From Adineta vaga (Eukaryota > Animalia > Rotifera), in NCBI GenBank assembly GCA_021613535.1, contig CP075495.1:11532001-11596000 (forward strand): a DNA stretch of 64,000 bases. Direction: 5' to 3'. Numbering within the stretch: the stretch's first letter is position 1; the number at the start of each line of letters is the position of its first letter. Below the pieces are notes generated by a model, which saw only the letters and a program-made list of their open reading frames with translations, had not been told where the DNA came from and ran no database searches. Below, piece by piece: positions 30,975 to 49,667 of this stretch. A program made the translations under genes and the position numbers.

Positions 30975-31511
30975 CTTGTTATCCTACTGTGTAGATTTCT
31001 GCCTTTTTCTATCACTAATTCTACAAAAATATTTTCTTGCGATTGAAGAACAATACAAAATCTTTTATATGTCAATTATTTCTTGCCGAAATATAATTTC
31101 CACCTGTTATTCATATAATTATTTGCTTTGATCATTAACAAAACGAAGAATAGAACAAACCGAAAAACAAACATAGATTATCGTTCTATAGAAACGAATT
31201 GACTTTTTTTCTATGAAATTAAGATGTCTTTAACAAATTGACAAGAAGATAATGAAATGACTTGAGATTTGTTTTTTGAAGTATAACTAAACAGATGGGT
31301 GATTTTCATCAATCAATCTATCTATCTATTTCGTTGCTATTGGTTCGAAAGATTTTTCTTCACCAATAAGAGAAAGAAATGAAATTGTTCATCATAATTG
31401 GTTGCGATGGTAATTGTTTTTCAAAATTTGTTTCATCTTATAAATCAATCATCTCTCTCTTGTTTTTATTCATATCGAAATCAACGAAAGTCATCATGAT
31501 CTTTAAAATCT
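30975..31511 (+). repeat. Left copy of a direct repeat (duplicated MARCH promoter/5'UTR plus first 5 codons)
   Basis: Near-identical to 49252-49667 apart from two extra segments (27 and 95 bp); identity stops after ATGATCTTTAAAATCT. Confidence 0.95.
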
Positions 31512-32029
31512 CTTCGTCTTTCGCCAAATGTCTATGATAAAGTCAAAACTAGCCGAATGAATCGGATGTCTTCCTCGCCAACACGACTTCAATTTGATTG
31601 ATGTATGTGTGAATTCAAGGTACTATTACTCTTTTATCGAAACAAGCAAAAATTGATTGCAGGAAAAATATACGATACATAAAAGAATCATACACTCTGA
31701 AAGAATACAGATTTGACCGAATTTGAAGTAGACGAAGATTCTCTGAGGTTTTGTATCAATTTGCTGACTCAAAAAGATTCGGTAGAGTGTAGAACAATTA
31801 TATGGAAAGAGAAACAAAGAGAAGGACGGAAAGGAAACAACAAAATAACTGACATTAGCCTTGCACCAGCAAATGACAATTGCTATAGAAAGAATTCCTA
31901 TAGTACAGTAATCGTAGAGAAAAACCTAAATTGAACCGATAGATGGACGAATTATCTGAGAAAGACAGCTGGAGAAGAGGAAGTCTTGAGATAGAGATGC
32001 GAGTACATTAACAATAATGATAAAAAAAC

Positions 32030-32485
32030 TCAATCATCCAGCGGACACAGAGGATATTTATGTTTTTCGCATATTGTCTGTTTTCGTAGTTGTTCGATAA
32101 ATATGTGTTGTTGACGTTCGATAAAATTAATTATTGATGTTAAATTATTACGTGCAATACTTTCATCCATACATTCAATGTATTCTGATCTTTTTTTTCT
32201 CTCAACAATCATCGGCAATAAATGATAATTCATGAGTATTTTGCTAGATAACAAACGCCCCATACGACCATTGCCATCAACAAATGGATGAATTCGTATA
32301 AATTCTGCATGAAACCATGCAGCTAATACAATTGGATCGATATGTTCGTTTTGGTATTGTTTTATTAAGGATAATAATAAGTAACGCTCATCCGTAGGAT
32401 TCGCTAACCCCTTTCTGAAAGAATTATAACGATGATTAACGCGTCTATATTCTTTAAAAAAAACTCTCTTAAAGAGAAGAAACAC
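32030..32485 (-). CDS. Fic/DOC domain protein (probably a 3' exon or 5'-truncated gene)
   Basis: Canonical Fic motif HPFVDGNGRMGR preceded by PIVLAAWFHAEFIRI and EYRRVN; no clean ATG-initiated upstream exon found. Confidence 0.8.
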   Translation of the reverse strand: MFLLFKRVFFKEYRRVNHRYNSFRKGLANPTDERYLLLSLIKQYQNEHIDPIVLAAWFHAEFIRIHPFVDGNGRMGRLLSSKILMNYHLLPMIVERKKRSEYIECMDESIARNNLTSIINFIERQQHIFIEQLRKQTICEKHKYPLCPLDD

Positions 32486-32559
32486 TCGTCAAAATTTCTT
32501 TTCTTGATTTTATGTTTTCATTTTGTTCAGCATCATTGAAAACCTCGATATCCACATTT

Positions 32560-33190
32560 TTAGCGCATCTGGTTGAACGAATAAAAAATATGCCCCGAAA
32601 TCGAGATTTATTTAGACTCTACACGCTTTATGAAATTATTCGTTTAAAATACTGAAAGATACAGCATCGAAAACTGAACAAACTTCTCTATTTAGATATT
32701 ATCTTTCTGTGGACCGATCGGTACTAGTCGAACATTAAAAATACGTAAATTTGATAAATATAATGATATTAATTGTTTCCATCTATTGGCTTTAATACAT
32801 CTAATATCTGATGTGACGAATAAAATTTTCATAGAAGGAAAACGATTGATAAAAAATTGTTCAAAAATATCAACTGCTTCGGACTTCGATTTAAAAGATG
32901 CATATGTCAAATTAATCAATAATATGTCATATGAATTTCGTTGTATAGGACTATATCGAAGTAATAAATTTGCTGATAAATAACGAAATTATGGAGCACA
33001 CGACAATAAACAAATCAATTGATTACAATATATTGAATTATCAGCGATTAAATATTCGATTGAGCTATATGAGAAAGTCATAATGTATTGTGTATATTTC
33101 GGAAAGTATAGAGGCGATTGATCTCAAATTGTGTCGACGGAAAATAATATGAAAGTGTTCCACAATAGATTTTTAATGTTGAAAAAAATC
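32560..33190 (-). pseudogene. Degraded LRR/F-box-associated-type coding fragment upstream of the Fic domain
   Basis: Frame reads ...FPSMKILFV...IKANRWKQLISLYLSNLRIFN..., a pattern recalled from rotifer F-box/LRR proteins, interrupted by stops. Confidence 0.4.
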
Positions 33191-35247
33191 TGAAATAAAA
33201 CATAGTTTCTCATAATATTAATGTAAGATACGATCAAATGAGAATTAAATAAATGAATAGACAACATTATTCTATAGAAGAATAAAATAATAGGAATCTA
33301 TCGAATGACGATAATGAGAAGGATATATCACATGATGCTTTAAACAAATATTATCTTCAAACAGAATGATCATAAAAGATTAGAACATTTATGATAATTA
33401 AAGGGAGATAGAGCTACTCTAATAAATTACTGCTTATGTCTATGAATAAGAAAAAATGAGTGGAAATATAGATGAGATTTACGAAACGTTAGTTTTTAAT
33501 TTTGTTCTCATTTCGTAAGTCGCTAAATATGGAAATTTGTATCTCTTTCGCTATGAAAATGGAAAAGAAAAACTTCTTCTACACAAGACATCAACATTAT
33601 TGTCTGTTTTTCTTTGAATCTAAAACAATGAAAAAAAGAACGAACAATCATATGCTCTATAATTTTGGTCAAATGTATATCTTTTCTGATAGAAGAGAAA
33701 GTTTTTATCTGAAAACATCAAATATTAAAAAATAAAGAAAAAGTATTCATTACGTTTTTTGTATGGACTCAATAGTTATTTGTCTAATTATGATAATGTA
33801 TAATCTCGGTTTACAATCGATTATTTTAAAATTTACAAGCTCGTCTTTCGAATGACGCTTGAGAATGTTTCCATTTTTATCTTGGTTATGATCCAAAACT
33901 CATTTGAACTTTCATTGTTTGGATGCTGTGAAATTGTTCAAACGTTATAGATGACTATTCTGTAAATTCGATATTTTTTGCAAATATATTTAGAACATTT
34001 CAATCAAAATTGATCAAATCAATTCAGACAAAGTTTATCATTAATTATGCCAGCTCTTTTCGACTAATGCTAAATATTATTTGTTAATTCATGTCAGAAA
34101 TAAAATAATCCTATCTTTGTTAAAATACCAATGTTATATGAAAGAAAATTTCCATTTAGTGTAAATATATCAATTATATACTTCCTCAATATATTCATAG
34201 CCAAAAAGTCAGTGATCAATATGTCATTGGTTCAATGGAAAACCTGTGATAATATATGCGTCGATGATATATTTTAAAAGAATGTTCATGACAATCGATA
34301 GATTTAGAACGGCAGTTAACATCGATTTCTCAAACAAAACAAAATCGACCTATTCGACAAAGAAATTGTTATGGATATACATTCAACAACTCAATGTTCA
34401 TTCTCATGTGTAGTTATTTGAATGCACTGCATGAAAAACTTCAATAGATCTAGTATAGTCGATTTCATTGTGTTTACAAATGCATCTCGCCGCATTTATT
34501 AGTTGAGCCTGAGATGGAAACTTTTCTCTAAGAAGTTTCTATTTTATGTTGATAGATGTACGAATACAAAACATCTTTCTATCATTAGACATCCAAGGTC
34601 ACATCCAAGAAGCATCTGAATGAAGTTGTGAAACTCGTCATCCATTTTATCTTGATGTCAACCCCAACTCTCTAGCGTTCCAAACACAGTAAAGATTTGC
34701 AACGCCCTAAGACATTAAACTCAACCTTATTACGAGAAATATTCAAAATAAAGTCCACAAGTATATTGTGCAACTTTTTCAAGTACAACATAATGTTTGA
34801 GAAAACTTTTCCCAATAGTTTCCAAAAGATCAACGCTGGGAATCAGTGCAGCAGACACATTAAAAGACTTATACGACGCGCCGACGGTTGTCCTTCTTCT
34901 TCTTCTTCACACCAATTGCATTGTTCAAAATTTTTGATAAGATATTCTCTTAAGAGTCGACAATTTCAGAAGATACGATATGATACCCATCAAACTTCTC
35001 GCATAACCGATAAACTATAGTGCATTTCAAATCCACGATTTCGCTTTCACGGACATACACAAATAAAAAAATTTACATAAAAACCCATCTCCCACAGTGG
35101 GACATAAAGAGTTTGCAACAAAATGCACTATCACACGTTTACTACGACTTCGAAACACAATGTGTATTTATTTTTCCACCCACGAGTTTGCCCTAAAAAG
35201 CATTCTCGAGAAACAAGCGCTACAAAACAATGTTCCTTGAGCCCAAC

Positions 35248-48502: not shown

Positions 48503-48840
48503 ATTATGTTCTCATTCAGGTTCATATCGATATCTGATTAAAAATTGTTTTTTTTTCAAAAGAATATATTAAATATTTATTGTTATCATTTAGACTCATA
48601 TCTATATCTGATTAGAGGTGAGTGGTACTTCAAATATGAAGTCGACCATTTTCTGTTATCATTTAGGTTTATATTCATATTTGATTAAAGGTGAGTGATA
48701 TTTTTAATGTTAGGTTAAATATTTTCTATTGTCATTTGGATTCAGATCGAAGTTAAATGAACGATGAGTTATATTCGACATAACTAAATATTTTCTCATT
48801 TTATATTCAGATCGATCCTCATCGCAGAGGGAGGGTAAGT
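48503..48840 (+). repeat. Degenerate ~72-bp tandem repeat (5 units) with micro-exon-like AG/24 nt/GTGAGT structure
   Basis: Units such as tcatttAG-actcatatctatatctgattagag-GTGAGT and tcatttAG-gtttatattcatatttgattaaag-GTGAGT. Confidence 0.55.
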
Positions 48841-48988
48841 GAGATACTTGGAATAAAAACAAAATTATTTTCACTTATCAAGCATTAATCCAGACTACTA
48901 ATCGAAGATCTACGAGCTGCGGAAGACCGTCGTGAATAATATACATTGTTAGTTGAGTATTTAGTACGAGTTTCTAAGAAAAGCAGCA

Positions 48989-49074
48989 GTGTCACATATC
49001 GCGCAGATCGGGGATGCTCCCTCATCTCCCGGAGGAGATGAGGGAGCATCCCCGATCTGCGCGATATGTGACAC
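48989..49074. repeat. Perfect 41-bp inverted repeat with a 4-nt loop (hairpin/cruciform)
   Basis: GTGTCACATATCGCGCAGATCGGGGATGCTCCCTCATCTCC-CGGA-exact reverse complement; 24/41 GC. Confidence 0.98.
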
Positions 49075-49251
49075 CACTCAAAACATTATGTCATCCTTGG
49101 TATTTCATATGTAAGATTCAAAAAAGAAACCCTAAATTGAAAAATCCCTATTTGGTCATTACTATAAACGTCATCTGAATGTTTCTCTAAAAATATGGAT
49201 TTCTTAGGGGGACGAATTCAGGAAATTAGATTCGTGATAAATGATAATCTA

Positions 49252-49667
49252 CCTGCTATCTTACTGTGTAGGTTTCTGTCTTTTTCTTGCGATTTAAGAA
49301 CAATAGAAAATCTTTTATATGTCAATTATTTCTTGCCGAAATATAATTTTCACCTGTTATTCATATAATTATTTGCTTTGATCATTAACAAATTGACAAG
49401 AAGATAATGAAATGACTTGAGATTTTGTTTTTTGAAGTATAACTAAACAGATGGGTGATTTTCATCAATCAATCTATCTATCTATTTCGTTGCTATTGGT
49501 TCGAAAGATTTTTCTTCACCAATAAGAGAAAGAAATGAAATTGTTCATCATAATTGGTTGCGATGGTAATTGTTTTTCAAAATTCGTTTCATCTTATAAA
49601 TCAATCATCTCTCTCTTGTTTTTATTCATATCGAAATCAACGAAAGTCATCATGATCTTTAAAATCT
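49252..49667 (+). repeat. Right copy of the direct repeat; continues into the intact MARCH ORF
   Basis: Matches 30975-31511; ATG at 49652. Confidence 0.95.

What the first reader, a model, noticed from the sequence alone, without database searches (positions are those of the whole stretch)
30975..49667. ~17.7 kb defence-like island bounded by a direct duplication of the MARCH promoter
Seen: 30975-31511 and 49252-49667 are near-identical direct repeats. The left copy stops after five codons, the right runs into the intact MARCH gene. All genes between them are on the minus strand (Fic, F-box/24xLRR, receptor ART), and nearly all recognisable MITEs in the window lie inside, while the flanks are dense conserved genes. 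Inference: a cargo block was inserted by break repair or recombination that duplicated ~0.5 kb of target. The result resembles a eukaryotic defence island combining AMPylation, ubiquitination and ADP-ribosylation modules, potentially excisable by recombination between the repeats. No transposase or integrase is visible.
Basis: partly seen in the sequence, partly recalled or inferred. Interest (0 to 1): 0.9.

Follow-up and report, generated by a model that had tools for sequence, protein, structure and literature searches.

The report
Repeat-rich insertion splitting a MARCH promoter
A 17.7-kb stretch of DNA missing from related rotifers sits in the promoter of a MARCH ubiquitin-ligase gene and is flanked by two copies of about 0.5 kb of that promoter. 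It is a patchwork of mobile-element copies, telomere-repeat scars, two broken genes and one intact receptor gene, not a dedicated defence island.

Summary
Window 30975-31511 and 49252-49667 are direct repeats, about 98.7% identical with three indels, and they occur only twice in the 100.8-Mb genome. The left copy ends 16 nt into the MARCH reading frame.

The insertion reading is supported. Two assemblies of a relative and a third bdelloid contig show SYF1, INCENP, one promoter copy and MARCH with nothing in between. The homoeologous chromosome-5 region has only 2.3 kb at that place. Short-read contigs from three independent studies bridge the left junction. Their depth is about half that of the flank, which suggests the insertion is on one homologue only.

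The "defence island" reading is not supported:
- The Fic reading frame is a 152-codon fragment.
- The F-box/LRR gene has two frameshifted exons. It lies in an 8.8-kb copy of a dispersed element with at least 30-40 copies.
- A truncated TIR transposon, a short repeat and two telomere-type tracts are also present.
- Only the ART-TM-FG-GAP gene looks intact.

The most likely origin is subtelomere-type DNA captured during break repair, with duplication of the target. A sister copy of the element on chromosome 5 has the same architecture, a 0.64-kb flanking duplication. Earlier notes of this scan, on other DNA of this genome, already described the F-box/LRR family as a dispersed, transposon-like unit.

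The parts
30975..31511 (+). Left copy of the MARCH promoter/5'UTR/first 5 codons (A-left). It keeps the ancestral 95-nt segment and has a derived T at 31429.
31512..32378 (-). Single-copy DNA with the distal part of a Fic reading frame. The frame spans 32033-32488, has an intact HPFxDGNGR motif and no ATG start, and covers Pfam Fic profile positions 21-93 only.
   Evidence: contigs of three studies span 31482-32473 without mismatch
32379..41212 (-). E1, an 8.8-kb copy of a dispersed element with at least 30-40 copies that carries the F-box/LRR gene. It belongs to a three-member subfamily that lacks the T insertion and ends in telomere-type repeats.
35248..39857 (-). F-box exon (39525-39857) plus about 24 RI-type LRR exons of 84 nt separated by 57-nt introns. 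Exons 36105-36189 (85 nt) and 35962-36047 (86 nt) are frameshifted and give stop codons.
41203..41225 (+). Short C-rich telomere-type tract, the complement of (TGTGGG)n, at the right end of E1.
   Evidence: repeat unit from PMC7943196 and PMC8494291
41610..41867 (+). 235-bp short repeat (91-95% identical copies near several chromosome ends), followed by a second C-rich telomere-type tract at 41838-41867.
42238..46375 (-). ART (45539-46375), TM segment (45238-45453) and FG-GAP repeats (42238-44535). This is an apparently intact single-copy member of a multigene family; paralogs are 66-74% identical.
47025..48872 (+). Solo copy of T, a 1.84-kb element with about 45-nt terminal inverted repeats. 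It is 79% identical to the T copies inside canonical E and has lost its 3' end.
48989..49074 (.). Perfect 41+41-nt palindrome with a 4-nt loop. It is unique in the genome.
49252..49667 (+). Right copy of the promoter (A-right), continuous with the MARCH gene. It has lost the 95-nt and 27-nt segments.
49652..50630 (+). Intact MARCH-type RING-CH gene (RINGv exon 49828-50097).

Best explanation
**What it is.** The 17.7 kb between the two promoter copies is a lineage-specific insertion into the promoter of a conserved MARCH gene, in a gene-dense part of chromosome 2. The assembly fits Adineta vaga AV20.

**What the inserted DNA is made of.** It is a patchwork of the kind found near this genome's chromosome ends, not a functional cassette:
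- a Fic gene fragment;
- a frameshifted copy of the dispersed F-box/LRR element, whose end is capped by telomere-type repeats;
- a short repeat capped the same way;
- one intact ART-TM-FG-GAP gene of a multigene family;
- a truncated TIR transposon;
- a palindrome.

**How it most likely got there (inferred, not shown).** A pre-existing piece of such DNA was captured while a double-strand break in the promoter was repaired. The repair either involved template switching or joined ends broken at staggered positions. Either route leaves about 0.5 kb of target on both sides.

**Present state.**
- The insertion is probably carried by only one of the two homologues in the laboratory strain.
- Recombination between the two promoter copies could delete it.
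- MARCH keeps a working-length promoter copy.
- The left copy now points into the insertion, antisense to its genes.
For: **Shown**
- The repeat has only two copies in the genome.
- Relatives have a single promoter copy between INCENP and MARCH. The relative shares the 95-nt segment and the C at 31429, so both window copies carry derived changes.
- The homoeologous chromosome-5 region has 2.3 kb where the window has 20.7 kb.
- The left junction and the E1 boundary are bridged by 992-1006-nt contigs with no mismatch in runs of three studies, from 2013, 2015 and 2021.
- Those contigs have 0.49-0.59 times the depth of the flank contigs, and the promoter itself has about 1.5-1.8 times.
- E1 matches at least 30-40 loci on all six chromosomes at 85-94% identity. 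Its Fic-side boundary falls at one nucleotide position in every copy, and its other end is constant within each subfamily: canonical copies run about 570 bp further than the window's three-member subfamily.
- The T fragment has terminal inverted repeats.
- There are two telomere-type tracts against 0.04 expected by chance, both inside the insertion.
- Two LRR exons are frameshifted, and the Fic frame is partial.
- The unique parts of the insertion have no second copy in the assembly.

**Parallel case.** A sister E copy on chromosome 5 is flanked by a 0.64-kb direct duplication of local DNA at 98.3% identity.
Against:
- Hemizygosity rests on contig depth alone, which the tool itself warns is a weak measure. 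No contig shows the empty allele directly.
- No donor locus exists in the haploid assembly. The nearest E copies are only 93-96% identical while the promoter copies are 98.7% identical, so the age of the event and whether it was copy or cut are open.
- Neither junction shows a clear repair signature.
- 'Subtelomere-type' is inferred from where E copies, ART paralogs and the 235-bp repeat lie, roughly 70% within 3 Mb of chromosome ends by my count. It is not a traced origin.
Confidence: 0.6

Rival explanations
1. Stepwise nest. A small initial event duplicated the promoter, as a tandem duplication or a short insertion. The gap then filled over time by independent insertions of E, T, the short repeat and other DNA.
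For: The pieces differ in similarity to their relatives: E1 is 87-96% identical, T 79% and the 235-bp repeat 91-95%. E and T are families with defined ends.
Against: - T lacks its 3' end, and E1 ends at an internal telomere-like motif instead of the canonical terminus. Neither looks like a fresh transposition into this site.
- The promoter copies differ by only 1.3%, less than E1 differs from any other copy.
- The ART gene and about 2.5 kb of unique DNA belong to no repeat family.
Confidence: 0.2
2. Eukaryotic defence island. A co-adapted and possibly mobile cargo combines AMPylation, ubiquitination and ADP-ribosylation modules.
For: - Three conflict-associated domain types lie within 15 kb on one strand.
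- Earlier scan notes, unchecked here, report fast-evolving binding residues in the F-box/LRR family.
- The locus appears to be a presence/absence polymorphism.
Against: - The Fic frame is a fragment without a start.
- The F-box/LRR copy has stop codons after two frameshifted exons. It is one of at least 30-40 element-borne copies.
- The 14 other copies I fetched show no matching Fic or ART sequence within about 1.5 kb, and the close Fic and ART paralogs lie at other loci.
- The combination occurs nowhere else in the genome.
- No expression or challenge data were obtained.
Confidence: 0.07
3. Old homozygous insertion that one homologue recently lost by unequal recombination or single-strand annealing between the two promoter copies. 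The apparent empty allele would then be secondary.
For: - The single promoter copy inferred for the other homologue seems to combine left-copy features (the +27 and +95 segments, at full depth) with the right-copy base at 31429, as a crossover product would.
- Hemizygous deletions, with unequal recombination proposed as one possible cause, are described for this species (PMC13564844).
Against: The same feature set is also the ancestral one, since the relative has the 95-nt segment and C. The data therefore cannot tell a primary empty allele from a secondary one.
Confidence: 0.25
4. Assembly artefact. The duplication and the interior were joined wrongly in a collapsed haploid assembly.
For: The assembly is haploid for a diploid genome, and the two copies differ by about as much as alleles do (1.3% against 1.7% mean heterozygosity, PMC8494291).
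Against: Independent short-read contigs from 2013, 2015 and 2021 cross 31482-32473 without a mismatch. The left copy is continuous with unique flank in contigs spanning 30341-31086.
Confidence: 0.03

Closest known systems
Templated or captured insertions flanked by a duplication of the target (replication-based template switching, FoSTeS/MMBIR, and related break-repair products)
   Same: Foreign-to-the-site DNA made of several unrelated pieces sits between direct copies of a few hundred bases of local sequence. There are no transposase footprints.
   Different: No donor copies remain in the assembly. No microhomology or filler could be read at the joints. The mechanism is inferred from architecture only.
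Athena / Terminon telomere-attached retroelements of bdelloid rotifers (as I recall the Arkhipova laboratory's descriptions; those papers were not read here)
   Same: Units end in short C-rich complements of the telomere repeat, are cooriented, can carry or trap host genes with introns, and are concentrated near chromosome ends.
   Different: No reverse transcriptase reading frame and no hammerhead ribozyme were found. Canonical E copies end in a small hairpin plus AATAA instead of telomere repeats.
Gene-carrying non-autonomous DNA elements (Pack-MULE or Helitron-type gene capture)
   Same: E is an 8-10-kb unit with constant ends and at least 30-40 copies. Canonical copies are 91-96% identical to one another, and the only gene carried is a host-type intron-bearing gene.
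   Different: The left flanks of canonical copies could not be fetched, so target-site duplications and terminal structure are unknown. No CTRR end and no long terminal inverted repeats were seen.
Prokaryotic defence islands and plant or animal NLR-type receptor clusters
   Same: Domains typical of conflict systems (Fic, LRR, ART) are clustered in a variable, repeat-rich locus.
   Different: Two of the three genes are broken. There is no evidence of shared regulation, and the same combination does not recur elsewhere in the genome.

Membership tests
Insertion with target duplication (structural variant) | Related genomes carry the uninterrupted site with one copy of the duplicated sequence | tested here: met
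   L038/L039 and L040 show INCENP, about 2 kb, then MARCH. A three-way alignment shows one promoter copy.
Insertion with target duplication (structural variant) | Both novel junctions are supported by data independent of the assembly | tested here: inconclusive
   The left junction is bridged in three studies.
Insertion with target duplication (structural variant) | The duplicated sequence is not a dispersed repeat | tested here: met
   Only two copies in 100.8 Mb.
Defence island | The member genes are intact | tested here: not met
   Fic is a 152-codon fragment. The F-box/LRR gene has two frameshifted exons with stops. Only the ART-TM-FG-GAP gene looks intact.
Defence island | The same genes recur together at other loci or in other genomes | tested here: not met
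   The 14 fetched E copies (about 1.5 kb of flank each) show no matching Fic or ART sequence beside them. The Fic part outside E has one close paralog elsewhere. ART has only distant paralogs at other loci.
Defence island | A defence phenotype or induction on challenge | not testable with these tools
   No RNA or challenge data were obtained.
Autonomous transposon or integrative element | Encodes a transposase, integrase or reverse transcriptase | tested here: not met
   No such Pfam hit in any reading frame tested. A canonical E copy has none among its reading frames of 70 aa or more.
Terminon / Athena-type telomere-attached unit | The 3' end is followed by C-rich telomere-repeat complement | tested here: met
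   Tracts at 41203-41225 and 41838-41867. The three subfamily copies all end at such a tract and then diverge.
Terminon / Athena-type telomere-attached unit | Hammerhead ribozyme motif next to the repeats, and an Athena reverse transcriptase | tested here: not met
   No Rfam hammerhead at E <= 1 in 30500-50000. No RT reading frame.
Dispersed F-box/LRR element (E) | Shares both element boundaries and internal order with the other copies | tested here: met
   Left boundary at 32372-32379 in all copies. The right end is shared with two copies. The interior is collinear apart from the missing T insertion.

The most novel reading that the evidence does not exclude
Break repair in this desiccation-tolerant asexual animal repeatedly moves pieces of chromosome-end DNA, carrying variable receptor-type genes and telomere-repeat scars, into gene-dense chromosome cores. 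The process duplicates 0.5-3 kb of the target. Two of the three known copies of one element subfamily sit in such structures, and they lie in homoeologous regions, which hints that the homoeologue took part in the repair. If so, this would be a route for spreading and reshuffling fast-evolving gene families, and perhaps foreign DNA, without a transposase.
Probability: 0.15. Interest if true: 0.7.

Novelty: new variant of a known kind. Interest (0 to 1): 0.42.

Why it matters
**As a defence island:** it would have been remarkable, but that reading fails.

**What remains:**
- It is a well-documented example of how a bdelloid genome acquires a large, probably one-homologue-only insertion in a conserved promoter. 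The empty site is known from relatives, and a second event of the same architecture lies on the homoeologous chromosome.
- It gives a concrete locus for testing how broken chromosomes are repaired in this animal.
- It can also show whether promoter-length direct repeats cause later deletions, and how the large F-box/LRR family spreads.
- The duplicated promoter now points antisense into the inserted genes, which could matter for their silencing.

Tried and rejected
- **Hammerhead or other RNA families at the element ends.** Only a tRNA outside the region passed threshold, and only weak miRNA-like hits to the palindromes appeared.
- **Homologue search with the 765-aa FG-GAP exon.** It was swamped by bacterial and Rotaria repeat proteins at 43% identity or less. 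No orthologue or donor was found.
- **Exact look-up of the promoter-MARCH reading frame in other assemblies.** Nothing is on record.
- **Wild isolate run X11.** It is too diverged, with almost no flank laid, so it says nothing about presence or absence.
- **Left flanks of canonical E copies and more of the Fic paralog.** Target-site duplications of E are therefore unknown.
- **Flanking duplication around the third subfamily copy (L024).** None was seen within the 0.5 kb of right flank that I hold.
- **Spliced models.** Exons were searched one by one by reference. The joined F-box/LRR, ART and MARCH models were not sent to any search tool, and joining was done only inside local scripts to check reading frames.
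- **Idea that the 47.0-48.9 kb piece is the part excised from E1.** Rejected, because the same deletion form is shared by three copies and the piece is an independent TIR element.
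Full report
**Setting.** The window is C2:11532001-11596000 of a 100.8-Mb assembly in six contigs. The contig sizes, the 2-5 homoeology and the (TGTGGG)n telomere repeat fit the Adineta vaga AV20 assembly described in PMC8494291. Earlier notes of this scan name the same species. G+C is about 30% in the flanks and rises to 35-44% inside the finding.

**The observation.** The repeat finder and two alignments confirm a direct repeat. 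Homology runs from about 30975 to 31511 on the left and from 49252 to 49667 on the right.
- About 386-400 aligned bases carry 5-10 mismatches.
- The left copy has two extra segments of 27 and 95 nt.
- A search of the whole genome finds only these two copies, so the refuting condition 'high-copy dispersed repeat' is not met.
- The repeat ends 16 nt after an ATG.
- On the right this ATG (49652) opens an intact five-exon RING-CH (MARCH-type) gene. Pfam RINGv scores E 2.6e-15, and the gene is collinear with a relative's 271-aa protein.
- On the left the frame stops after 13 codons.

**Genes between the repeats.** All are on the minus strand.
- A reading frame at 32033-32488 matches Pfam Fic (E 5e-16) and has an intact HPFxDGNGR motif. 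It covers only profile positions 21-93, has no ATG, and no further Fic-coding exon was found upstream. Two other Fic loci in the genome lie in open frames of 369 and 408 aa, and one closer paralog is also short. I read the window copy as a gene fragment.
- An F-box exon (39525-39857, E 2e-4) is followed by an array with a 141-bp period. Each unit is an 84-nt exon encoding one 28-residue ribonuclease-inhibitor-type LRR plus a 57-nt GT-AG intron.
- Twenty-one LRR exons are clean. Two consecutive exons, 36105-36189 (85 nt) and 35962-36047 (86 nt), are frameshifted and produce stop codons in the joined frame. That check was a local script; the joined model was not sent to any search tool.
- ART (45539-46375, E 1e-6), a hydrophobic segment (45238-45453) and a 765-aa FG-GAP exon (42238-44535, FG-GAP_3 E 2.5e-77) form what looks like an intact receptor-type gene.

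**Is it an insertion?** Yes.
- A profile-free search with the RING-CH exon found proteins about 80% identical. The sources label them Rotaria sp. Silwood1.
- Their loci in two assemblies (L038, L039) read SYF1, INCENP-box gene, 2.1 kb, RINGv gene, DUF4795 gene. A metagenome-derived bdelloid contig (L040) has the same order.
- blastn shows the window is collinear with L038 on both sides. Nothing in L038 corresponds to 31520-49613.
- In a three-way alignment the relative has one promoter copy that runs into MARCH. It contains the 95-nt segment and has C at the position of 31429. The right copy therefore lost 95 nt and the left copy gained a T after the duplication.
- Inside the genome, the homoeologous region on contig 5 is collinear with the window at 68-76% identity. 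It has only 2.3 kb between the equivalents of 30779 and 51522, and no MARCH gene.

**Is the junction real, and is the insertion on both homologues?**
- Logan contigs of runs from three studies (2013, 2015, 2021) each contain a 992-1006-nt contig matching 31482-32473/32487 without a mismatch. These contigs bridge the left promoter copy into the insertion and also the boundary of the element described below.
- Their word depth is 49.5, 23.2 and 62.8. The flank contigs at 30341-31086 in the same runs have 85-94, 39.2 and 128.6. The ratio is 0.49-0.59.
- No second, diverged contig lies on 31600-32199, so a diverged second allele does not explain the low depth.
- The promoter bins have about 1.5-1.8 times the flank depth.
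- A contig lacking the 95 nt has about 0.5 times the flank depth.
- All contigs show C at 31429.
- Together this fits three promoter copies per diploid genome: two on the insertion-bearing homologue and one on an empty homologue.
- This is suggestive only. The tool warns that contig depth is a weak measure, no contig shows the empty allele end to end, and the right junction could not be tested.
- Ancestral hemizygous deletions are known in the laboratory strain (PMC13564844).

**What the interior is.** It is not one cargo.
- *Element E.* Window 32379-41212 matches at least 30-40 loci on all six contigs at 85-94% identity. I call this unit E. In fourteen fetched copies the order is a left arm (like 32372-32787), then a 1.84-kb insert, then the body (like 32786-41170), then about 570 bp more that ends in a small hairpin plus AATAA.
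- Canonical copies are 91-96% identical to each other. They contain no transposase or reverse-transcriptase reading frame.
- The left boundary is at the same nucleotide in all copies. Read ends at 32379 in all runs agree.
- *Element T.* The 1.84-kb insert, T, has about 45-nt terminal inverted repeats. The window's 47025-48872 is a separate, older copy of T (79% identical) that lacks its 3' end.
- *The window's copy, E1.* E1 lacks T and stops at an internal telomere-like motif, followed by a short C-rich tract (41203-41225). Only two other loci share this end: C5:7942195, in the homoeologous region, and C2:1423419.
- *Second tract.* It lies at 41838-41867 and closes a 235-bp repeat whose other copies lie near chromosome ends.
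- The 12-mer pattern for two telomere units occurs twice in the window, both times here, against 0.04 expected by chance. The unit (TGTGGG) is the bdelloid telomere repeat (PMC7943196, PMC8494291).
- *The remainder.* This comprises 31512-32378, 41226-41609, the ART gene, 46376-47024 and 48873-49251, including an 86-bp perfect palindrome. It has no second copy in the assembly.
- By my count, about 70% of E copies and most ART paralogs lie within 3 Mb of a chromosome end, so the insert resembles chromosome-end DNA.

**An odd detail.** The last roughly 100 bp of E's left arm continue the Fic reading frame seamlessly (Pfam alignment from residue 12). A Fic paralog at C2:15.09 Mb also has the start of E's arm beside it. 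E's boundary therefore seems to have been cut inside a Fic exon when the family arose, and the window retains more of that exon than standard copies do. I could not fetch the sequences needed to settle this.

**A parallel case.** The sister copy on contig 5 (88-95% identical to E1, with the same two ends) does not lie at the homoeologous position of E1. It lies between the equivalents of 60147 and 61078. There it is flanked, at 1-1.5 kb distance, by a direct duplication of 0.64 kb of local gene sequence at 98.2-98.4% identity, plus a further 135-bp piece. Two of the three members of this subfamily thus sit inside 'local duplication, foreign DNA, local duplication' structures, and both lie in one pair of homoeologous regions.

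**Mechanism (inference).**
- The architecture fits capture of a pre-existing fragment during break repair. The repair either switched templates and returned about 0.5 kb behind its point of departure, or joined ends broken at staggered positions on sister or homologous chromatids.
- In the second case the 1.3-1.7% difference between the flanking copies would simply be the allelic divergence, which averages 1.7% (PMC8494291).
- A stepwise nest is possible but fits the truncated ends poorly.
- A dedicated defence island is not supported: two of the three genes are broken, and the combination does not recur.
- An assembly artefact is unlikely for the left junction.

**Limits.**
- Only one read-laying run was allowed.
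- I have no RNA data.
- The relative is probably from another genus, so the insertion is dated only as later than that split.
- Exons were searched singly by reference.

Noticed in passing
G000:C5:7937980-7953364 (loci L018, L015; positions 31980-47364 of my concatenated C5:7906001-8006000): A sister copy of the F-box/LRR element in the homoeologous region is flanked by a 0.64-kb direct duplication of local gene sequence (98.2-98.4% identical) plus a 135-bp piece. This is the same architecture as the finding.
   Followed up: partly
window 32379-32488 and G000:C2:15087433-15088019: The terminal roughly 100 bp of the dispersed element encode a Fic-like segment that is in frame with the Fic fragment outside it. 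A Fic paralog elsewhere also has the element's first roughly 60 bp beside it, and that roughly 55-bp end occurs alone at 9 or more other loci.
   Followed up: partly
L025-L037 (canonical element copies), e.g. L032:7831-9667: The 1.84-kb insert inside canonical element copies is a non-autonomous element with about 45-nt terminal inverted repeats. Older solo copies are scattered in the genome, for example C5:591776 and C3:16283110.
   Followed up: partly
window 48989-49074: A perfect 41+41-nt palindrome with a 4-nt loop, G+C-rich for this genome and unique in the assembly. It gave a weak miRNA-precursor-like Rfam hit (E 1e-6, below the gathering score).
   Followed up: partly
window 38684-39003: An inverted array of GGATTTGG-type short repeats in the first intron of the F-box/LRR gene. 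This stretch is not shared with the other element copies.
   Followed up: no
window 27542-27615: A tRNA gene (Rfam 66.9 bits). The homoeologous region carries three tandem copies of the same tRNA plus a fourth about 46 kb away.
   Followed up: no
window 31379-31537: The left promoter copy keeps the 5'UTR and ATG and points into the insertion, antisense to the Fic and F-box/LRR genes. It could drive an antisense transcript. No RNA data were obtained.
   Followed up: no
L038, L039 (NCBI GCA_905250075.1, GCA_905332315.1): Records labelled Rotaria sp. Silwood1 align to this window at 75-85% nucleotide identity, even across intergenic DNA. That is closer than I would expect between genera, so the label or the divergence deserves a look.
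   Followed up: no
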